Of a stretch of 64,000 bases of DNA, positions 12,816 through 54,858 are shown piece after piece. Every line of letters begins with the position of its first letter. Position 1 is the stretch's first letter. The translations under genes were made by a program, and so were the position numbers. A model generated the notes under the pieces. That model was given only the letters and a program-made list of their open reading frames with translations. It was not told the DNA's origin and made no database searches. This stretch comes from Pelomyxa schiedti. Taxonomy: Eukaryota; Protista; Evosea. The DNA lies in NCBI GenBank assembly GCA_020536535.1, contig JAHLWZ010000601.1, forward strand, positions 1 to 64,000, given 5' to 3'.

Positions 12816-15688
12816 TCAATTCAAGGCAAACTTTCGTGCCACAGATTTGATGACCCAGCAGCACTGTTTTCCACTGGAGTCACGTCGCACATTCAGAGAC
12901 GTTCTTTTCACGATGTCACCAAACGGTGTTCCAGTGGGAGCGCTGGTTAACGCTGTTCAATTTATGTCAGCTGCTTTGGCATAATGAAATTCTGAACCTT
13001 GTATGAAATGCCTGGTGAAAAGTCCACTTTTTGGTGACTGCACTGATGCAGCTGCTGACTGAGCAGCAGGATCCTTAGTTGAACTTCTGGAAATCACGAC
13101 ATAGTATCCACTTGGCCTACAATTTCGAGCCAGGTTGTATCTGACATTGGCACAATCGAAAGCTGGAGCATGCTGGGTCTAGTGGAAATTGAGTGACAAG
13201 AAGTGAGCACAACATACCTGCTCATTGGCATTTTCTTCTTCTTCTTGGGAGTGCACAGGGGCATCCAGCACGACAACGACGATGTGAGACTTTGCAATCA
13301 AATTATTGACAACCCTTTGGATTTCGACGAGCGGAATGGCCCTCTGACCGGCATAATATACAAAGGATGCAATCTGATGGTTGGAGGGAACAAGTTGAAG
13401 AAAAAAAGACAGCGAGTCATGTTTACAAACCAGTTTTGTGTCTGAACAGGGAAGTTTACCAAGGAAGTTCTGAAGGCCCTCTGTTTCCCAGTTCGGCTCT
13501 CTTCCTTCTGTGACTTTGATCTGAGGAGTCCCTTGGAGCACCTGAGGAGAAGGCACATGAGGAGAAAAGAAAGGCGAAACCCATTGAACAATACATCGCA
13601 AAGCCCAGGCGAACCAACAACAAGTGCCGACACATCAAAACCGAATTCAGTAAGACTCCTAACTCCTGTCTTATGTGAGTACATTAATGCAAGTGGACTT
13701 GGTGCTCACTTATGGTATGACGCACAACGAAGTTTACAGCGTCACTGGAAAGCTGGGAGTCTCCTTCAACGACTCTATAGCCATCAACATTGTGAAGCAG
13801 TTGGCGGAGCTTTCCTGCATCGTCTCTGTGGACGTGAATAATTGGTTTTTGTGTGGGATAGTGCTGAATGGTCCGAGGTCCCAAAGTTGCCTTGGAAGAT
13901 GCCTATGGGTATGGGGAAAAAAAAATGGAAAGAGGTGATAGAAGAAGGTCTCACCAGTGAAATATTTGTGTGAGATACTAGATGTGGCCGCAACGAGTTC
14001 TGAGCCTGTCGACTACTAATAGTGGTGCTCTCACCCAAAGGAGCCTGGTTTCGGTGCATTCTTTCCAAGGTTTCTTTCTGCAATAGTGACAATTGAATGA
14101 AGTCCTGTTGTGTCACTGGGATTTTTACTTTGTTCCTCACCGAGTCCGCAATCCATAAATGCTTCTTCAAAATTTCCTTGCGCTCTTGCTTGGAGTTGCA
14201 ACCAAGCTGGTTCATTTGCACACGGAGATTGAGAATGAGGAAGTCGAAAACTTTGTTGTGCTGGTCTCGTGTTTTCCACATAGCATATGGGAGAACAAGG
14301 AGGTCGAAAGGGTGTGACTCGTCCCTGTCACACGAAATTGCCACCACATGCAGCACTTCGCTGAGTTGTTTCCGGCGCCTATCTGAAAGTAATCCCCCAC
14401 AGAGCACATGCTCATAGGCATTGATTGTCTCAGTCGAACTTGACAGGGAAGACACATAATCATCCAGCTCTTCCAGGAGCCTGCCTACCTCAGACTTGTC
14501 TCTTTTATTACCGGTTCTCCACCCCCCCTGGATATTACCCTTATTTTGGTTCATAAACTGGTGAAGTGATACAATATCGGCAAAATCCAAAGCGGGCATA
14601 TCATTGTCTGGGTGGATGGGTGGATGTGGTGGCCTGGTTTCCAAGTTGTACATCTTCATCTTGTCTGTTATTGGGTCCAGCAACACCCTGAGTAAGAACC
14701 TATCGAAGAGTGCTACCTGGCTGGCATCCATTGGAACCTCATTGGTGGCAGCAAACACTGTGTGTAACGGAAGCTGAATACACTGGGTTCCGTCATAGAA
14801 CTCCCTCTCATTGAGAACTGGCAGGAGCACACTCAGCACCTGTCTCTGGGCTTTGAATATTTCGTCAACAAACGCAAAGAGAGTCTCCTTCCCGCATAAC
14901 TTATTGTCCTTAGAGCGGACATAGATATTTTTATCCAGTTCCTTCAAGTCGATAGTACCAACCAGGTCATCCAACGTAGTTCCTGCATGTACCACAATGT
15001 TGAAGAACCTCTTTTTGCCTGTATTTGTGCGGTCCGTCTTTATGACCTTGCAGAGTTCTTTACAAACAAAGCTTTTTCCAGTCCCAGGTGGGCCAAACAG
15101 TAGCACGTGCTGTCGGCACAGAACTCCCAGCAAACAAACCTTTACTGCCTCATCACGTTCGACGAAGAGTTTGGTTACATGCCGCAAAAGCTTCCCCATC
15201 CTTTTACGAAAGTGTCCCCTTGACCACCCTGTGGCAACTGGGAAATTCGTGACAACGTTCCATTCTTCCTGGTTCCTAGGTGGAACTTGGGGTTCTTCTT
15301 CTTTTTTGGTCTCGCTCGCGCTCTCGCTGGCGCTCGCGCCACTGTTGCCGTCAGAGAGCGCAGAGAGGATAGCAGACGCGACGGCTTTCGCAGTGTCTGT
15401 CGCCGCACTGGTGATCGAGGCTGTCATGGCGTGAACCACAGCAGCGCCTATAGCTTTGGTGACCGCATCGGCGACGGCAATAGCCACGGCGTTCGCACCT
15501 TCACAGTTGCCGGTCACTCCACCGCCCTTTCCTGGAATCGGCAGTGTCAAGAGGGCGGGTGTTGTCGCCTCTGTCTGGGGCTTGTCATCGCGCGACGTGG
15601 AACTGGTGGACTGTAACGGGGGGGTTGGAACAGGGCTGGGCGAGGTCGCCGCAGATGTTTCAGGGTTACTTGTGTTGTTCTCGTACAT
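12816..15688 (-). CDS. RavA/MoxR-type AAA+ ATPase fused to a C-terminal inactive caspase-like (peptidase C14) domain, multi-exon
   Basis: AAA+: VERDEAV, LLFGPPGTGKS (Walker A), FVDEIFKA (Walker B), LNEREF, AATNE, ALFDRFLLR, LSDRR. Downstream exons give SALVVG, IASFVYYAGQR, VVVLDAP, GYYVVIS, SGLFTRHFIQ and TGTPFGDIVKRTSLNVRRDSSGKQCCWVIKSVARKFALN* (TGA at 12816-12818). Confidence 0.8.
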
Positions 15689-42700: not shown

Positions 42701-45700
42701 AGCGGCATATGACGTGGCGCCCTGGGCAGCTGGTTGAGTGCTCTTTCTTCCTCTCCCATGCGGGTTTACCAGGTGCCAGAGGGCAACCGCAAACTGCACA
42801 TGCTATAGGGGCAGCGGTGCACTCGTCCCTCCAGTGCATTTCCTCTGAACCACGTGGCACACAGATCTTGCAGTGCTGGCATTCCACTGTTTTCTGGCAG
42901 GAATGTACCTTGCACACTTTGAATTCCTTTCTGCAGTTCATGCAGAACATTACATGCGTGCTATCTCTGAAGCACTTGCATCTACCACAAACATCCCCTG
43001 GGGCCCTGTTTGGGCAACTACCTGTGAGGTGATGATACTGCTCCTTTCTTACCATTTTTGAATTGCACTTTGGGCATTCCCACTGACCTTGACAGAGGTT
43101 GTTATGGTGCTCTCTTTTTCGGCCAGGTTCAACTTCCATTGTGCAGTATTCACATATTTCGGACCTGGATTCTTGCCTTTTGGAGCACTCGACCGCCATG
43201 TGTCTCTCTTGATCAACAGCCATGACTTCGACTCCGCACAGGGGACATTTGCTTTTCACATTTGCGGCGCAGATGTCCACATGCCGGTTTAAGGATGCTT
43301 CTGAAACTCTCTTCTTGCACAGTTGGCACTCAAATACCTGCTGTTTTATGACAGGAACGTCGCAGAGCAAAGGGTCATTCAGGTCCCTAGTTGTCAGCTG
43401 AAGAGCAAGTGGATCCTCCGGGGAAACTGTGCCATCCCGATCATACTTTGCACAAACATCAGCAATCAGGGAATGTAGCTTCTTTCCTGAGACCTTCATT
43501 TCTGCATAATGTTCAAGAGGGATCGAGGAAGCGCGTTCTGTTTTGTAAGATGAGTCTGGATCCAAAGAGGGTGGCTTGTGCTCTTCTGGGGTCTTGGATT
43601 TGTTGCTTTTCCACTTTAGTAAAAACTGAAGGAGCTGTGTAAATGAGTAAATGCATCTGTAATTAAAGATGACAGACCAACCTTTTTGGCTATGTCGGAC
43701 AGTAGGGTTTTGAGGTTCACACCCATTGTGCCTTTTATCGCTTGCCCAGACATGATTATGTCATATGTCACTATCACTTTTGCGGAGCTTTTTTCAGAGG
43801 AAACTGGCCCACCAATACTTAAGTTCTTCACCAGCAACTTTCCCTCACACATGTTCATCAAAGTTTCCTTGAGAGTGTTAATATGTCCGCTCTCAACTGC
43901 CTCGGCAACGTCCGCAGCCATTTGAACCATATCTACTAAGAGCCCTTGAACAAACTCTGGCAGGAACCTAGAAACAATCCGTTGGGCGCGCCTAAGTCCC
44001 CGAAGGCACAATTGGGTGATGCCCCTGATGCAGTCGTGCAGCCCATCCAAGATTGCCGAGACTACACTGCTGCACTCGATGTTTCTGCAGTTAAGTCTCG
44101 CTTGAATGCTTGGCAGTCCTTTTGTCCAAGTGACTTGTAACACACCTCCCATTTCGACTCCACAATTTGGTTGTGCTTCCGAGTTTGCCAGAACCACTGT
44201 GTTTTCCTCACAGTTAGGGGTTCTCAATAAAGATATTCTGATTTCAACACTCAAGAACAAAGAGCTGGGCGCACAGGAGAACCGAATCTCAGAACTCAAG
44301 GAAAGGTCAAGAATACTCGGAAGAATCGTAATCTGGGTCGTAAAGCTGAACCCAGCAGTTCTCCTGGCTGTGTCTACACTCAGCGTCACCTCACATTGGC
44401 CAAGGATAAAGAGTATTGTGGAACGCACTGTACACGTCCAATTTCGGATGGCAATTGATAGTTCCAGTGCAGCAGATGGTGGTCCTCCACTCACGTTTAT
44501 ATTAGTAAGTAGCCCAAGCAACACTTTTGCCTCAAGACCAAGCCATGATAGATGTGCCGTAAATCCTATAAAATTCTCAGTTGCCTCCAATAGCGGCGTT
44601 GTCCTTTGCGTTTTATTTTGAATCAACCTCAAAAGAGAGTTGTCGGCCCTGTCTTTTGGTTGAGGGAGACTGGTGAGTTCTTCATTGTCAAGCTTGAGCA
44701 GGAGGCCCAACTCTTTTATGTTTGGAAGGGCACGGTCAAGAGCTTCTACATCTGCATAAGAACAGCGACGGAATATCCTGATCACTGCCCCAATCGTAAG
44801 ATTGTCACAGAAGAGGTAAACGGTGGTTGGTGATACCAGCCCTGCAGAAAATGTCACCCTAAATGCAGCTGCAAACGCTGGTGCAGGCCCATCCGTCCAA
44901 GTGGTACGCACGCCACCAGAGAAGAAGATAGAAACACAAGAAGGTGCAAGAGTGAGTTCCCCACGAAGTCCATATATGGCAAGGTGACTCAACGAGTGAT
45001 GGAACGTTGATAGAGGAATTTCAGACTCCAACGATAGAGAGGCCACCAGAGAGGGAGGGACTACAGTTCCTTTAAGCACTGCGGTCATCTGTAGGCCATT
45101 TGAAAATTTAAGATTCGTCTGAATCTCGACCTTTGGTTTGGGATATGCCATAAGCTTCAACCTACAACCTCCACTTTCAAGTCCTGCTGCAGGCAGCGAG
45201 AAGTTGCCCAAGTCGATATCCACATGAAAGCCGGAATCACTGAAAATTAGACAAGCTTCGAAGCGGTGGCCTTTAAGGTTGAGAATGTCAAAAAAGCTAT
45301 CAGTAAGAATGCAGCATAGTGAAATGCAAAGGTATAGACTCTCCTTCCTACGAAGCAAACGTTGGGCGGAGGTGCAAGCCCCCAAGAAGGACTTGTTCTC
45401 AACATGTTCCATTATGGATTCGGCAATCCTGGGCTCCACATCATCGGGATGCCGGGAGGATTTATATGTGAACTCAAACTGGTGGAGCTCCACATCCACA
45501 GGAAGGGAGACATCATAATCAAATAGTGCTTTAAGGATTGACGATAAGGCAAATCTCGAAAACTCCACAGAGATACACGTGTGACCATCACAGTGAAGGA
45601 GACATGCTTTTAGTCCTAAAGGTTCAAGAGCAGCTTCTATGGAAACATCCATAAAAAACCCCACAAAGCATGACGGTCCATGGGGATTTGCGTCTGCCTG

Positions 45701-47044
45701 CCGTGAGTGACTATCTGCCAGCTGTAGCAGCAAACTGTAGTTATTTACAGTGATTTTCTTCAGTGCTCGTTGCACCTTTTGTCTCAAACTGCCTCCACTA
45801 TCCCCTTGCTCCTCAAATCCAATACCACGCAAAATTTGGAGAAGATGGAGCCTCTTAGGGTCGCCTGATACCGGTTGGACTGGCCGCTGCAAAGCCAAAA
45901 AGAACTGTGTGCCTTGCTTTTGGTCGCCAAGAGAAAAACTGGAGCTGATGCAAAGTGGTAGACCAAAGAGGATTACCTCATTCGTTTCCACAGTACACGA
46001 CTTGAGTCTCACGCCATTGCCCACTTCAAGGTCAACCTCAAGGCGGAATGTTGTGCTTTCTCCCATCTTTAATATCGCATTGTCAGTTATCTTCTGCAGA
46101 ACTTTGGCAACTTTCTTCATGCCAAGGGTATCCTTAACCATTGCAATAATTCCACTCTTGCTAGCCTCAATATTGGCTTGGAAGCAGAATACAGAGGGCT
46201 GTACCAACTTGGAGTCATCCACCCCTCCTGCGCCTTTGAGCGATCCTATTGCCTTGCTCGTTTGCGGTTGCATAAGAGAAACTGCTGCTCTATCTCCTTC
46301 AAGAGTTTCCAAACTTGAACCTGGTATCTTTGCCGTTGGGTTCGAGCTCTGTACTCGGTCCGTCTCCGCGACCACTTTCTGATGAGTCATTGCAAGCTTC
46401 AGACCCACAGCAGCACACTCAATCTCAAGTTGCTTCACAACAACATTCCACTCGGATCCAAAGGTGACATCCACCTCAAGGGAGACTTGAATCTGGGGAA
46501 CTATCTTTTGCAACATAGAATTCACACTTGTCATGGTTTCTGCTGTAAGAACTTTGCTCAGGCATTGAAATAACTTCGTCAAAGAGGCACCCTTGCAGAG
46601 CATTTTGCAGCCTCGGTTGGAAATCACCAAACTGGCGGTGGCCCCTTTAGCGTGGCTCTCAGCAACCTCATTGGGTATGAAAAACTCCTGCAGAGATACG
46701 TTTACCATCCAGTCATTTTCTGTGGTGTTGTCAAGGGTGCAACTAACATTGAGGCCGTCAAGCCCAAGGCAATCCAATCTCAGGGTACACTGAAGGTTAA
46801 CCCTCCCAGTGGAATGCCGAAAATTCTGTGGAATAGGAACGTTCAAGGAAGGAGCCACGCTTGCATCCATTGCCCCCCAGGCGCGCGTTGCGTTCCACCC
46901 TCTGTACCGCTCATCGCCGTCTTCGTCGTCATCGTCGTACTCGTAGTCCCATTTTTCCTCCGTGACATGGTTGCTGCAACTGATAGATGGGACTGTGTCG
47001 GCAGAGGCGGAGAAGGTACCAAAAACTGACGCCTCATCCGCCAT
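39768..47044 (-). CDS. About 2400-aa protein: N-terminal beta-rich A-family region (paralogue A3) plus a long TRAF-type zinc-finger array
   Basis: ORFs 43616-47044 and 39768-43565 join in frame across a 47-nt phase-0 intron at 43681-43635 (AAG|GTTGGT...ACACAG|CTC CTT CAG). The second ORF has no ATG start and carries more than 20 CxxC...H..xC units. Confidence 0.8.
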
Positions 47045-47711
47045 TTCTCTTTCCCTTCGCTACGAGACAGTTTCTCGTTTTAAAAAACGAACGAAACGTA
47101 ATGGAGATAAAAAGCTTACTGTTATTGACGGCTACTACTTTGGGTCGAGCGACGCTAAGAATAACAGTTCTAAATAATGCCAAGTTGGGGAAAGCTAAAC
47201 GGCGCTGACAGCTAAGGTGCGGACGAATATTCGATGTTCGAATACATTCGATTTTTTTTGACTATTCGACGAATAACCTATTATGAGTGTGATGTCTAGT
47301 GGGAGGACACCCGTTTTTTGTGACAACCGCGTCGGCTGTTCCCTACCATTGTGCATCTCAACTTGGCACCCAGGCCAACCCCACCAATAACCCCCAGAAA
47401 AAGGGCTCGCAACAACAAAGGGTCCCAAGTTTCATCTCAATCACAAAGTACCAAACGCCGTCGTGGAGGTTCGCCTTTGGCTTCTACACCCAGACCTTGT
47501 CTCCCATCCGTACAAACTTTAACACCTCCTCCTCCACTTTTTGCTACGTTGAGGCCACCCTCAGCATTACACCTGCCATTGCGGTCACCTATTTCACTTA
47601 GAGAGGGTGGANNNNNNNNNNNNNNNNNNNNNNNNNNNNNNNNNNNNNNNNNNNNNNNNNNNNNNNNNNNNNNNNNNNNNNNNNNNNNNNNNNNNNNNNN
47701 NNNNNNNNNNN

Positions 47712-48007
47712 GCTCACAGCTGATTTACGAGCACCTTGTCAAAATGCAGCTGCTCCAGAGGGGGTTTTTCACCAACATTCTCGTGGCAAAGTTGAAGAAA
47801 AACCAGATCCTGCTGACTGGTGATTTGGAGCCGCACAACACACACTGCGCAGGGATACTCGTCAAAATTGCTGAAGGGTCACTGGTGGAACATATTGACA
47901 TGGTAGTATTACCAGACGTGACCAACACACTCAAGAAGCTTGTTGAAATTCGTGGGAGGCTGAAAGAGTTCGAGAACTCGAACCTCAAGGAGCTTCTTCA
48001 GCTATAG
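47712..48007 (+). CDS. 3' end of a third DUF3638-family giant gene (paralogue G3); the rest lies in the scaffold gap
   Basis: SQLIYEHLVKMQLLQRGFFTNILVAKLKKNQILLTGDLEPHN is identical to 32613 onward and then diverges to its own stop. Confidence 0.75.
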
Positions 48008-48418: not shown

Positions 48419-51400
48419 ATGAATCCTGATCAGCAGGCGTTCGTCGAACGCCTCTGTACCCCCGAGCGCTTGAGTACCTTGGTACTGCCGACCCCCCCCG
48501 GCGTGAACTTCATCTGCGAACAAGAGAGTAAAATGGTATGGCAACGACAAAACAATGGTCGGTTGACATAGCGCAGACTCCATTGCATTGTGCCACAATT
48601 CTTGGTTACACAAGCACAGTCAAGTGGCTGCTAGAGAACAAAGCCGATGTGAATCTGACAGTAATGCTTTCTGTTGTCTTTTACCTTCTTACACCTGAAC
48701 CCCCTCCAAACTCCACAATGAATGTAGATGGTACTCGCAGAATTCAACTTACATCACCAGTCCCTACTAACACTAACCGCAGACTGTATGAAACATCTTT
48801 TTATTGTTGGCTAAACTTATATTACTTTTTTGTTCCAAAACTTGTCCCTTCGTAGAAAAATCTGGTAAGAAAGAAACTTCCCACAGCGAACCTCATTATA
48901 CAATAGAATAATAAGGTACAAGTCATAGACTACTTTACAACAACTTGACAAGGCAAAACTCTTAAAACACAAAAAGTGGGTATGATATGTGCCACAGCCA
49001 CCTCCCCCCCTCTTTTTGAAGGAAACAAACCACACAATACATGATGGTGACTGATAATTACTATTTTATTGAAATCCTCATGGGTGGCAGATGGTATGTA
49101 ACCTCAAAAACATAGTCATAACCTTTTTTTAATACATAAATCAGAAAGTGTGTCGTTCCTCTACAACCAACTCCATTGCTGACTCCCTTTTTTTGCTTTG
49201 TTGCATTGGATGACATAATAGCTTGTATATCACCCAATAGAACTTTTTATATATAGCTTTATTGCCCAAAAACACATCTTTTCTATCTTAACAAATATGT
49301 ATACAGATGGTACACACACCAGCATCACCATGAATTTGTTAAACCTCTTTTCCCTCCCATCAAACCCAAATATTTTTTCACAGAATGTATGCTGCACTTT
49401 CTGTTTTTCCAACCTAACACCCACAAATATGTGACCAAAAAACCAATAGGAAGTATGTGAAATGAAACTTGCATATTTTTAGCTGCTATACTCACCTTAT
49501 TCTTTCCCATTGGTTGCATGGTCACATTTTAGCTTGTATGGAATCAATACTAATTGGCTTCAACTTATCCTCATACATCACAATACACTTTTCTAACAGA
49601 ATGTGTGTACTCTGCTTTAACCCACTGTAAAACTCTTGTTTTTCCCTTACCCATCACAAAATAGATCGTATGTGATCACATAAACTGACTCAGACTAATA
49701 CCGTTTTCATGGATACTTTTCCCACTGGAATATGGTACCATAGGATGTATGTGCAAGGCAAATAGAAGTAATAATTATATTTATGTTCTCTCCAGGATGT
49801 ATGTTGTCAGCTGACCAGATTTTTAATTTTTCATATTCCTTCTCTCACCATATCCTTTACTGGGTGGCACATGCACACAGAAGGTATGGAACCAGTTTTA
49901 TTTTTGGAGCCTTTCATTTAAACATTTTCTCTGTGTTTTTTCTTCTTGCTATGATACACAAGACAGTATGTGGCCATCTCTCAATTTCTTTTTTCTCATT
50001 GTATGCAAATGAACCATTTGATGTCCTCACACTAGCTTGTATGTTTAGTTGATACAAACTACTTGCTCACTTTAAACTACAAACTCAATTAAATACCTTC
50101 TTTACATGTAGGATGTATGTACCAAGATGTGCAATCACTATTTTCTTTTCCTCTTTCTTCCTCCATCAAACAAAAATGTAATATAACTCTGTGTTTACCT
50201 CTTCTTCCCACTGAACACAATAGCTTGTATGTGATCTGCCTCCCCATCATTTTTCATTTTTGATCACACATTTTTCACTTGACACATGGCTCCATAATCA
50301 AAGATCGTATGCCATTTCAATCAACTGTTTATTTTCATTTTTCTTCTTTCAGGATGGCTGTTCGATTGTATGTTGTATTCAAAGTTTTATTTTTTACTTG
50401 ACTATTCACTTCTTTATGGAACAAATCAGGAACTTGTAAGTTGTGCTGTAGTGTTTTTTTCTCCCTCATTCCCAAATAATAAAAAAAGACCACACTGAAC
50501 ATTGCATGCATTTTGAGGCACAAAGGAATTATGGAACTCCTACTCAGCCAATGTTCTGTACAAATTGATGTGTGTCACTACATTAGTTTCTTCTTTGGGT
50601 TTCATATTAAAACAGGATGATACCCTTGCTCTTTGCCAGGACGATTCCATAAAACAGCTGTTGAAGCGCAAACAGGTTGATATTAGCAGAAGTCTTGATC
50701 AGTGTAGTTCTGATGACTTTTTGTGCAGGTCTCAGACGGGTCTCGAACACAAACACAGCCGCAAGCAGTGGCGCAAAGTCCAACGGCTATAACAGTAAGT
50801 CTGGCTATTGGCCTCAGTTCTGAACTTTACCCAGGTAGCTCCAGCAGTTGGCAAGATGGCAATAGCACCAGAATTGCAGGGTCTAACAGGACAAGTTACA
50901 GCCAGCAAGGAAATCGGAAGTACGGATGTATCAAAGGTTCGCATCAACAGAACCAATATGGACCAGCTGCAGGAATGGCTGGGGCTTGACTGTATTGGCA
51001 CAGAGACATCTCTCAACTCAAGATTTATCTCCACAGAGATTTTTGGTGCATAGCAACAGTATATCTGTTTCCAGCCCAATAATAATTGGCAGGAATAAGT
51101 ACCCTCAGTGTATCAGGGTACCGTTGTGGTGCATTGATCATTGGTGATGCTGAACCTCAGGAGCACAATAAGATAGCAACCTTTGCTAATGTGAAATTTG
51201 CCCCCTTTTTCGACTCTGCTCATCTCATTTAGTTTCTTCATGCTGTCTGTTCCTTTGATGTCACGTGGAACACAAACCCAAACACATTTACAGAGAAATT
51301 AGGGATCTTTTCCAGTCCAATTTCCTCCCAAGCGCCGTCTTCTTCTAGATCAGTGGCTCCACAAGGGAGCAAAGTACAGTTTTGTACAATTGTTTCACAA

Positions 51401-52066
51401 CCCTCAATGGCAAACATAGATTGCAAAGCTTCTGTACTTTGCTGGAAACACCAAGCAGGTGGGATCCCAATTGTGTTTGATGCCGGGTGACGCTCCACCC
51501 ACATCATACACCTCAGATAACTGCATCCCCCTCTCGACGATTGTTACCCAGCTTGCCAGCGACTCGGTCCTGCCCATTGTTATCATTGACGCCTACCGGC
51601 GTGGGGATGTGTGCCATGTTTTTGCACCCTGGCCCACTGTTTTTCTCAGACTTAACTAATAGGAGAATGAATCTGGCAACGAAAGTGAACCTGTGCAACT
51701 TGTAGAACAATTGGGCTTGCATACAGTGGCCACATCGTGCGGGATTTATGTTGTTTGCTGTGTGAGTCCTCAAGGTATGAGAATGTGGCCCTCTTGCCTC
51801 TGACACATGCGCAATCTTACAGACCGTGATGGACGACAAACAACAATGAAGAAACTTTTCACCACACGCCTTCTTGAAGGTGCTTTTCTCGTTACACGAA
51901 CTTTTCCTTACTCTCGACAGGTATGAAGGGTGCCAGGGATTCTGGAATAACAGGGACACCCTTTGATGATTTTGTTGGGCAAGCCAGTGAAGCTGTGCAG
52001 TACGACTCCAATGGAACCATCTGCCCTGTGATCTTTGATTCTACAGAGCCATTTGCCCTTTTCTGA
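48419..52066 (+). CDS. Ankyrin-repeat protein with a micro-exon-encoded loop and a C-terminal inactive caspase-like (C14) domain; one apparent +1 frame discontinuity at about 50981-50984
   Basis: Ankyrin exons 48577-48660 (TPLHCATILGYTSTVKWLLENKADVNLT) and 50489-50569 (TTLNIACILRHKGIMELLLSQCSVQID). C14-like exons RCGALIIG, IAKLLYFAGNTKQVGSQLCLMPGD, PIVIIDAYRRG, GIYVVCCVSPQ, LFTTRLLEG, TGTPFDDFVGQASEAVQYDSNGTICPVIFDSTEPFALF*. Confidence 0.75.
48661..50488 (+). other. Array of 24 phase-0 micro-exons (twenty of 3 nt, one of 6 nt, two of 9 nt, one of 15 nt) separated by 42-111-nt GT-AG introns
   Basis: Recurrent (T/C/A)AG|NNN|GT units, most often with donor GTATG, every 50-85 nt or so, usually preceded by a pyrimidine-rich tract; all lengths are multiples of 3 and none encodes a stop. 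Confidence 0.8.
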
Positions 52067-52177
52067 AAAACCAGTGCCTAAGTGGCTGAATAAAATAATC
52101 GAACGCAACTGGTGTTTATTTTATTATTGTACCAAGTGAGGAGAATGCATAAAGTAAACAATTCAGTTTTCCTCCAC

Positions 52178-54858
<2,681 letters not shown>

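What the first reader, a model, noticed from the sequence alone, without database searches (positions are those of the whole stretch)
51093..52066. Ankyrin sensor fused to a pseudo-caspase with both catalytic residues replaced
SEEN after manual splicing: RCGALIIG...FLHAVCSFDV...LLYFAGNT (Asn codon 51447-51449)...LCLMPGD...IPLSTIV...IVIIDAYR (Tyr codon 51594-51596)...GIYVVCCVSPQ...LFTTRLLEG. KNOWN: peptidase C14 (paracaspase/orthocaspase type) consensus is ALVIGN, LGFxV, LFYFAGHG, YLxPxD, IVILDACR, SxFTxALL. The His-Cys dyad is therefore H>N and C>Y. INFERENCE: this is a cFLIP-like scaffold or decoy domain coupled to a variable repeat sensor, an innate-receptor-like architecture.
Basis: partly seen in the sequence, partly recalled or inferred. 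Interest (0 to 1): 0.8.

Follow-up and report, generated by a model that had tools for sequence, protein, structure and literature searches.

The report
Ankyrin-headed dead caspase in an amoeba
The anaerobic amoeba Pelomyxa schiedti transcribes and splices a gene whose tail has a caspase (MALT1-like) fold but lacks both cutting residues, probably behind a tiny ankyrin head, so it most likely binds or regulates rather than cuts; it is a new layout of a dead-caspase module this scan had already found on three other kinds of gene.

Summary
Window 51093-52066 (+) holds six short exons that end one gene.

**Fold.** The 246-residue tail has a caspase fold:
- Its profile matches 19 Peptidase_C14 proteins at E 1.6e-21 over 212 columns.
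- AlphaFold models hit MALT1 first (E 4e-10; E 2e-7 with no canonical caspase in the input).

**Dead active site.** About 22 paralogues in the same genome keep the His-Gly and Cys motifs. Aligned to them, this gene has Asn (51447-51449) for His and Tyr (51594-51596) for Cys.

**Family.** It is the most diverged of six dead-dyad paralogues that form one group inside the amoeba's own caspase clade. Two of the others give dN/dS 0.28, so the dead domain is still under selection.

**Ankyrin head.** It is small: one clear repeat and one weak one, with micro-exons between them. RNA joins the last micro-exons to the tail. I did not show the link back to the first ankyrin exon.

**Function.** A cFLIP-like pairing or decoy role is inference only.

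**Earlier in this scan.** The scan found this dead-caspase module before on other DNA of this genome, fused to GTPases and MoxR ATPases. The ankyrin fusion is the new part. Verdict: new variant of a known kind, moderate interest.

The parts
48538..48660 (+). First coding exon: ATG plus one clear ankyrin repeat (ANK1)
   Evidence: Pfam Ank E 1.1e-7, 32.1 bits, above the cut-off. The GenBank model P0035 starts here. No close paralogue of this exon in the genome. Its join to the downstream exons in mRNA was not shown here.
48661..50488 (+). Micro-exon array, subject of another finding. I saw four of its exons in the RNA contigs: 50224-50226 (3 nt), 50304-50306 (3 nt), 50353-50367 (15 nt) and 50430-50435 (6 nt). 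The last three are spliced at both ends; 50224-50226 still carries its upstream intron.
   Evidence: The first 38 nt of L057 and L058 map to these four pieces, in frame with the next exon. There are 17 ag|NNN|gt candidates at roughly 50-240 nt spacing, none of them a stop codon. Eleven nt of intron (50213-50223) are retained at the 5' end of both contigs.
50489..50569 (+). Exon X1: degenerate second ankyrin repeat. The RNA-contig ORF call starts at an internal Met here.
   Evidence: RNA contigs. Pfam Ank/Ank_2/Ank_3 E 0.13-0.19 over Ank positions 4-32 of 33, sub-threshold. The frame is open upstream of the Met.
50616..50675 (+). Exon X2, short helical linker
   Evidence: RNA contigs; phase 0 on both sides.
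50729..50794 (+). Exon X3, low-complexity linker
   Evidence: RNA contigs.
50835..51045 (+). Linker exon. Its end carries a two-helix segment shared by all six pseudo-caspase paralogues, possibly a vestige of the SAM domain of the active paralogues.
   Evidence: Alignment A5. hhalign against the SAM region of active paralogues: probability 54%, E 1.2e-4, 27 columns, which is weak. All three differences between the two RNA runs lie here.
51093..51190 (+). Exon A: strand beta-1 and the start of helix 1 of the caspase-like domain
   Evidence: RNA contigs; alignments A2 and A3 and hhalign. The Asp that follows Asn in the N-D motif of helix 1 in C14 relatives aligns to Lys here.
51233..51373 (+). 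Exon B: helix 1, strand beta-2, helix 2 and a Ser-rich insertion
   Evidence: RNA contigs; alignment A2.
51420..51608 (+). Exon C: strands beta-3 and beta-4 with both former catalytic positions, Asn 51447-51449 (for His) and Tyr 51594-51596 (for Cys)
   Evidence: Identical in both RNA contigs. Aligned to about 22 in-genome exons that keep His-Gly and Cys. Profile A1 finds them at E 1e-9 to 1e-5. One such exon matches PF00656 positions 73-133 at E 5.9e-5.
51663..51774 (+). Exon D: loop and strand beta-5
   Evidence: RNA contigs choose the acceptor at 51662|51663; hhalign.
51823..51879 (+). Exon E: start of helix 4
   Evidence: RNA contigs; phase 1 on both sides.
51921..52066 (+). Exon F: helices 4-5, the last strand, a conserved hydrophobic C-terminus and the TGA stop
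   Evidence: RNA contigs. Together with exon C it is the best conserved exon against both dead (18/43) and active (10-14/43) paralogues.
52067..52108 (+). 3' UTR with AATAAA at 52089-52094 and a poly(A) site near 52108
   Evidence: L057 ends in a poly(A) run after 52108. The library protocol adds A-tails enzymatically (PMC10579272), so the site is probable, not certain.

Best explanation
This is an intact, transcribed and spliced gene of the anaerobic amoeba Pelomyxa schiedti. It encodes a small protein: a minimal ankyrin head (one clear repeat, a micro-exon-coded stretch, one degenerate repeat), a linker with a possible SAM vestige, and a C-terminal caspase-fold domain of the MALT1/orthocaspase type. 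The catalytic His in that domain is Asn and the catalytic Cys is Tyr, so it cannot work as a cysteine protease. These points are shown: the gene structure downstream of 50224, the fold, the loss of the dyad, and descent from the amoeba's own family of sensor-SAM-caspase proteases. The following is inferred. The domain is kept as a binding module. Caspases and paracaspases become active by pairing through their last strand and helix, and those elements are among the best conserved parts here. The most likely role is therefore to pair with an active paralogue, or with its substrates, and tune its activity in a cFLIP-like way, either positively or negatively. The ankyrin head would then supply a ligand or a location.
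For: Splicing and expression: two RNA contigs from two transcriptome runs. Homology: profile-profile probability 99.4%, E 1.6e-21, 212 columns against 19 proteins that all match PF00656 at up to 2.3e-41. Fold: AlphaFold pLDDT 80, pTM 0.79, with Foldseek top hits MALT1 at E 4e-10, then procaspase-1, caspase-11/-4 and metacaspases. A model built from the five dead paralogues alone gives the same result: pLDDT 70.7, MALT1 at E 2.3e-7, and the c-FLIP(L)/caspase-8 complex entry 3h11 (chain A) at E 1.1e-3. Dead dyad: unambiguous alignment to about 22 in-genome exons with intact motifs. The weak MALT1 sequence match places Asn and Tyr opposite the MALT1 His and Cys. Origin: dead (6) and active (3) Pelomyxa domains form a clade at 100/100 support, and the dead ones form one group at 87/97. 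Retained function of the dead module: dN/dS 0.275 over 174 codons between two dead paralogues. Core motifs and the C-terminus are conserved.
Against: The protein alone matches no Pfam family at E<=1 and reaches PDB sequences only at E 0.43. It is the longest branch in the tree at 1.57 changes per site. It aligns Lys to the Asp of the N-D motif in helix 1, and its SAM-like segment is cut down. Relaxed constraint in this copy therefore cannot be excluded, and dN/dS could not be measured for this gene itself. There is no evidence of any physical partner. No active caspase gene lies in the same 64 kb. The RNA link from the first ankyrin exon to 50224 was not seen here, and both RNA contigs carry 11 nt of retained intron with an in-frame stop at their 5' end.
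Confidence: 0.6

Rival explanations
1. Expressed relic: the gene is a decaying offshoot of the dead-caspase subfamily. It is still transcribed and spliced but has no selected function.
For: It is the longest branch of the family. It aligns Lys to the Asp of the N-D motif and carries a Ser-rich insertion. Its SAM-like segment is truncated. It fails Pfam on its own. All three differences between the two RNA runs fall in the linker, and at least two change the protein.
Against: The reading frame is open across every exon of the model (ten shown in RNA), with every GT-AG site intact and used. Hydrophobic core motifs and the C-terminus are conserved, and the model reaches pLDDT 80. The sister dead paralogues are under purifying selection.
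Confidence: 0.2
2. Two products: the dead caspase is translated from the internal Met in exon X1 (the 372-residue ORF called on the RNA contigs) without any ankyrin head, and the ankyrin exon belongs to a separate or non-productive transcript.
For: Both RNA contigs stop at 50213 and have stops in all three frames within their first ~50 nt, so their longest ORF starts at that Met. No database ORF joins the first ankyrin exon to the tail apart from the GenBank model, which reads through introns.
Against: The 11 nt carrying the stop are the exact 3' end of the intron in front of the 3-nt exon 50224-50226, which indicates a partly spliced RNA. Starting at that Met would cut an ankyrin repeat in half. 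The frame stays open through the spliced 3-, 15- and 6-nt exons and contains no ATG. Every micro-exon length is a multiple of three. An earlier follow-up in this scan reports RNA joining the micro-exons in order (s1-585496, not re-tested here).
Confidence: 0.12
3. Still a protease, using other residues in place of the canonical dyad.
For: Several Cys residues lie in exons C and D. The Asp two residues before the former Cys position is kept.
Against: Both dyad positions are replaced, and by different residues in each of the six paralogues: N, I, T, T, H or Q at the His position and Y, F, F, V, F or P at the Cys position. That is the pattern of lost catalysis, not of a new mechanism. There is no His near the site.
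Confidence: 0.03

Closest known systems
MALT1 paracaspase (human and mouse; PDB 8v4x, 4i1p, 3v4o)
   Same: Best structural match for both models (E 4e-10 and 2e-7). It is the only PDB sequence family reached. Strand order is the same, and the motifs around the former His and Cys align residue for residue.
   Different: MALT1 keeps its His and Cys and is an Arg-specific protease with death and Ig domains. This protein has Asn and Tyr, aligns Lys to the Asp of the N-D motif, has no death or Ig domain, and shares about 16% identity.
c-FLIP(L), the animal pseudo-caspase that pairs with procaspase-8 (complex entry PDB 3h11)
   Same: A caspase-fold domain that has lost catalysis, descended from active paralogues in the same genome, and kept under selection as a family. 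The 3h11 complex entry (chain A) is reached by the pseudo-only model at E 1.1e-3.
   Different: c-FLIP shares DED recruitment domains with its partner. Here the equivalent SAM domain is at best a vestige and the head is ankyrin. Heterodimerisation is untested. The two arose independently.
Bacterial pseudo-orthocaspases (PMC6426788)
   Same: Non-animal C14 domains in which the His-Cys dyad is replaced (there mostly by Tyr and Ser). The nearest non-Pelomyxa relatives of this domain are bacterial or metagenomic caspase-like proteins, including one from Microcystis aeruginosa.
   Different: Those are prokaryotic with other domain partners. The Pelomyxa dead domains form their own clade with the amoeba's active caspases.
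The P. schiedti sensor-SAM-caspase family and the dead-caspase fusions to GTPases and MoxR ATPases
   Same: Same domain clade, same exon layout and same C-terminal ending. The active members carry LRR_6, ankyrin or Sel1-like heads plus SAM. The dead members share the linker segment.
   Different: This is the only dead member found with a repeat head instead of an NTPase. It is also the most diverged, and its SAM-like segment is the shortest.

Membership tests
Peptidase C14 / caspase-hemoglobinase fold (clan CD) | Sequence homology to the C14 domain over its whole length | tested here: met
   hhalign of the pseudo-subfamily profile against 19 PF00656 proteins: probability 99.4%, E 1.6e-21, 212 columns. 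The single sequence fails Pfam. Paralogues score 15.8-18.5 bits against a cut-off of 21.4.
Peptidase C14 / caspase-hemoglobinase fold (clan CD) | Alpha/beta fold with a central six-stranded sheet | tested here: met
   AlphaFold pLDDT 80 and 70.7. Foldseek probability 1.00 to MALT1, caspase-1/-4/-11 and metacaspases.
Peptidase C14 / caspase-hemoglobinase fold (clan CD) | Catalytic His-Cys dyad | tested here: not met
   Asn (51447-51449) and Tyr (51594-51596) sit at the aligned positions, with identical sequence in RNA. It belongs to the fold family but is not an active peptidase.
Paracaspase (MALT1 type) | Death domain and Ig domains flanking the protease domain | tested here: not met
   Pfam finds only Ank in the full GenBank model and nothing in the tail.
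Paracaspase (MALT1 type) | Acidic S1 pocket for a basic P1 residue | tested here: inconclusive
   The Asp two residues before the former Cys is kept. The Asp of the N-D motif in helix 1 aligns to Lys. Assigning these positions to the S1 pocket rests on my knowledge of MALT1 and metacaspase structures.
cFLIP-like pseudo-caspase regulator | Caspase fold without catalytic residues, derived from active paralogues | tested here: met
cFLIP-like pseudo-caspase regulator | Forms a heterodimer with an active caspase and changes its activity | not testable with these tools
   No complex prediction or assay was available. The only support is conservation of the last strand and the C-terminus.
cFLIP-like pseudo-caspase regulator | Shares the recruitment domain of its active partner | tested here: inconclusive
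   Linker against the SAM of active paralogues: probability 54%, E 1.2e-4, only 27 columns. No Pfam SAM hit.
Ankyrin-repeat protein | At least two consecutive ankyrin repeats in one polypeptide | tested here: inconclusive
   ANK1 E 1.1e-7. The second repeat reaches only E 0.13-0.19. mRNA continuity between them was only partly shown.
P. schiedti sensor-SAM-caspase family | Repeat head, SAM domain and active C14 domain | tested here: not met
   A head is present, the SAM is vestigial at best and the C14 domain is dead. It is nevertheless the sister group within the same clade.

The most novel reading that the evidence does not exclude
The gene is one regulatory arm of a caspase-based, receptor-like surveillance system so far seen only in this amoeba. 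About 22-27 repeat-SAM-caspase proteases would act as sensor-executioners. Six dead-caspase proteins (GTPase, MoxR and ankyrin headed) would pair with them as switches or decoys. The micro-exon-coded ankyrin loop would give a cheaply variable recognition surface, perhaps aimed at the amoeba's many prokaryotic endosymbionts or at viruses.
Probability: 0.15. Interest if true: 0.8.

Novelty: new variant of a known kind. Interest (0 to 1): 0.5.

Why it matters
Dead caspases that steer live ones are central to animal cell-death control (c-FLIP). Outside animals they are known almost only as unexplained bacterial pseudo-orthocaspases. Here a free-living amoeba has built a small clade of conserved dead caspases next to a large family of sensor-linked live ones, independently of animals. 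It has attached the dead domain to four different heads. The ankyrin-headed copy is the simplest, at roughly 450 residues by my estimate from the exon lengths (the exact micro-exon content is not established). That makes it the easiest to express and to test for pairing with an active paralogue. The published papers I opened on the P. schiedti genome and consortium do not mention caspases.

Tried and rejected
- **Pfam on single exons by reference:** no C14 hit.
- **Pfam on the whole spliced protein:** nothing at E<=1.
- **phmmer against PDB:** only E 0.43-1, though all hits were MALT1.
- **Pseudo-family profile against PDB sequences:** only a chance spidroin hit.
- **The look-up of sequencing runs:** I therefore used no read laying and did not try the run ids by another route. 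RNA evidence comes from stored Logan contigs instead.
- **Word search with the first ankyrin exon:** found nothing.
- **Word search with residues 1-45 of the GenBank model:** found only an unrelated 367-residue ankyrin protein. No stored ORF links the first ankyrin exon to the tail.
- **Genome search with the first ankyrin exon:** no paralogue.
- **Minus-strand gene under the finding:** rejected. The 148-residue ORF 51513-51959 lies opposite exons confirmed by RNA on the plus strand.
- **Alternative acceptor at 51705 for exon D:** rejected by the RNA contigs.
- **Joining exons:** Exon searches were done by reference. The spliced sequence I used (P0004, P0035, P0036) is a database record returned.
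- **First dN/dS script:** failed because gapped tblastn ran through introns. It was redone ungapped.
Full report
**What the window is.** The window is contig C601 of a 52,367,397-base assembly in 5337 contigs. That matches the published Pelomyxa schiedti single-cell genome of 52.4 Mb in 5337 scaffolds (PMC8887013). GenBank records returned for the encoded proteins name the same species. P. schiedti is a free-living anaerobic amoeba. I found nothing human-like and no toxin or virus issue.

**Check of the observation.**
- Reading the splice sites from the sequence gave a chain of short GT-AG introns (40-54 nt) with matching phases.
- The exons are X1 (to 50569), X2 (50616-50675), X3 (50729-50794), a linker exon (50835-51045), A (51093-51190), B (51233-51373), C (51420-51608), D (51663-51774), E (51823-51879) and F (51921-52066, stop TGA).

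The big profile search with exon C returned P0004, a 372-residue protein whose sequence is exactly this splice chain. P0004 and its near-twin P0036 are ORFs on 1264- and 1255-nt Logan contigs from SRR23919876 and SRR23919873. Those runs are the P. schiedti transcriptome reads of PMC10579272. Aligned back to the window, the contigs give ten blocks at 98.6-100% identity with exactly my exon borders. One of them ends in poly(A) after about 52108, some 14 nt past an AATAAA.

**Is it a caspase fold?** Single exons and even the whole P0004 match no Pfam family. Four independent lines nevertheless agree.
1. A profile of exon C from six paralogues hits about 30 places in the genome at E 1e-9 to 1e-5. 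Those are the same places that Pfam PF00656 hits. One such exon on its own matches PF00656 positions 73-133 at E 5.9e-5.
2. A profile of the five full dead domains, with this protein as first row, aligns to an alignment of 19 mostly bacterial or metagenomic proteins at probability 99.4%, E 1.6e-21, over 212 columns. All 19 match PF00656 at up to 2.3e-41. Those 19 had been picked through exon C, but the match covers the whole domain.
3. An AlphaFold model (28-row alignment, pLDDT 80, pTM 0.79) finds MALT1 paracaspase first (E 4e-10). Procaspase-1, caspase-11/-4 and metacaspases follow.
4. A second model made from the five dead paralogues only, with no canonical caspase in the input, gives the same ranking (pLDDT 70.7, pTM 0.77; MALT1 at E 2.3e-7). 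It also reaches the c-FLIP(L)/caspase-8 complex entry.

**The dyad.** About 22 exons in this genome keep the canonical strand-His-Gly and Asp-Ala-Cys-Arg motifs. Aligned to them without ambiguity, this gene has Asn-Thr for His-Gly and Tyr for Cys. The weak MALT1 sequence match shows the same register. Five further genes share the loss, each with different replacement residues:
- two GBP/URGCP-like GTPase fusions on C900;
- a small-GTPase fusion on C807;
- a MoxR-type AAA+ fusion on C795;
- a second MoxR fusion in this very window, at 12819-15688 on the minus strand.

The different replacements are what one expects after catalysis stopped mattering.

**Where it came from.** In a maximum-likelihood tree of the 28 domains, the six dead and three active Pelomyxa domains form one clade (100/100) apart from the 19 other proteins. 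The dead ones form one group (87/97). This gene is the longest branch, at 1.57 changes per site, so its exact place is less sure. No relative closer than the P. schiedti paralogues turned up among 1.84 billion representative proteins.

The active relatives carry sensor-type heads and a SAM domain before the protease:
- LRR_6 repeats, which is why GenBank calls them NLRC3 or NOD3;
- ankyrin or Sel1-like repeats.

All six dead proteins share a short helical segment in front of the domain. Its first helix aligns weakly with the start of that SAM domain (probability 54%, E 1.2e-4, 27 columns). I count this as a lead only. In this gene the segment is the shortest.

**Is the dead domain still used?** Between the two GTPase-fused dead paralogues, dN/dS is 0.275 over 174 codons of the domain. 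The module therefore stayed under purifying selection after losing the dyad. I could not measure this for the present gene because it has no close relative. In its favour:
- the frame is intact across every exon of the model (ten of them shown in RNA), and every splice site is in use;
- the core motifs are kept;
- exons C and F (the last helices, last strand and C-terminus) are the best conserved parts against both dead and active paralogues.

Against it:
- the long branch;
- a Ser-rich insertion;
- Lys aligned to the Asp of the N-D motif in helix 1.

**The ankyrin head.**
- The exon at 48538-48660 begins with ATG and is a significant ankyrin repeat (E 1.1e-7).
- Exon X1 encodes a second, degenerate repeat (E 0.13-0.19).
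- Between them lies the micro-exon array that another finding of this scan covers.

The first 38 nt of both RNA contigs are made of 50213-50226, a 3-nt exon (50304-50306), a 15-nt exon (50353-50367) and a 6-nt exon (50430-50435), spliced in frame onto X1. The first 11 of those nt are the end of the intron in front of a 3-nt exon (50224-50226) and hold an in-frame TAG. These RNAs were therefore only partly spliced at that point. The library method also captures non-polyadenylated RNA.

The frame upstream of the internal Met is open and has no ATG, and all the micro-exon lengths are multiples of three. Translation from the first ankyrin exon is thus the simplest reading. I did not, however, see RNA that spans 48660 to 50224. 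The GenBank model (P0035, 562 aa) does start at that ATG but reads through introns in the array.

**How it most likely works.** These points are shown: an expressed protein with a caspase fold, no dyad, and a small ankyrin-type head at least partly joined to it. The rest is inferred. Like c-FLIP with caspase-8, the dead domain probably pairs through the conserved last strand and helix with one of the amoeba's active sensor-SAM-caspases, or holds their substrates. The ankyrin head would bring a ligand or a place. I put this at about 0.6. The rivals are a selected-for-nothing relic (0.2), a headless product (0.12) and residual catalysis (0.03).

**Known or new.** Pseudo-caspases are a known kind: c-FLIP in animals and pseudo-orthocaspases in bacteria (PMC6426788). 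This scan has already reported the same dead module on other DNA of this genome, fused to GTPases and MoxR ATPases, as well as the active sensor-SAM-caspase family. It has also read this same stretch a second time. What is new here is the ankyrin and micro-exon head on the dead domain, and the RNA proof of its splicing. The P. schiedti papers I opened do not mention caspases.

Noticed in passing
window 12819-15688 (-): A second dead-caspase gene lies in the same window: a bpMoxR/AAA_5 ATPase (Pfam E 9e-35) fused to the same linker and a caspase-like domain with Gln for His and Pro for Cys. It corresponds to GenBank KAH3760538.1 (P0025).
   Followed up: partly
window 52178-53964 (-): A PAK-like kinase gene (PBD E 7.7e-10, plus Pkinase exons) converges on the finding. 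Its stop is only about 70 nt from the poly(A) site of the dead-caspase gene, so the two 3' UTRs probably overlap.
   Followed up: partly
window 50213-50226; L057 and L058 positions 1-14: RNA contigs from two separate runs both begin at the same base, 11 nt inside the intron ahead of a 3-nt exon. This suggests that this intron is removed late or inefficiently compared with the downstream ones.
   Followed up: no
window 48661-50488: The GenBank model KAH3760546.1 (562 aa) reads through introns in the micro-exon array, so its residues ~42-175 are probably wrong.
   Followed up: partly
L042 (G000:C290:54078-54272) and L044 (G000:C448:85286-85462): Two further paralogous exons carry a partly changed site: Tyr for His in one, Ser for His with the Cys kept in the other. 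The family may therefore hold intermediate or additional dead members.
   Followed up: no
L045-L056 (e.g. G000:C721, C933, C644): Active caspase paralogues sit behind long arrays of ribonuclease-inhibitor-type LRRs in which each repeat is split over small exons. GenBank names them NLRC3 or NOD3 although Pfam finds no NACHT domain in the two I scanned.
   Followed up: partly
window 43616-47044 (-): An intronless 1142-residue ORF directly upstream has no Pfam match at E<=0.01.
   Followed up: no
window 50835-51045: The two RNA runs differ from each other at three bases, all in the linker exon. At least two change the protein, and there are no differences in the 741 nt of the caspase-like domain.
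   Followed up: no
window ~47600-47713: An assembly gap (run of N) lies about 800 nt upstream of the gene's start codon, so its promoter region is incomplete.
   Followed up: no
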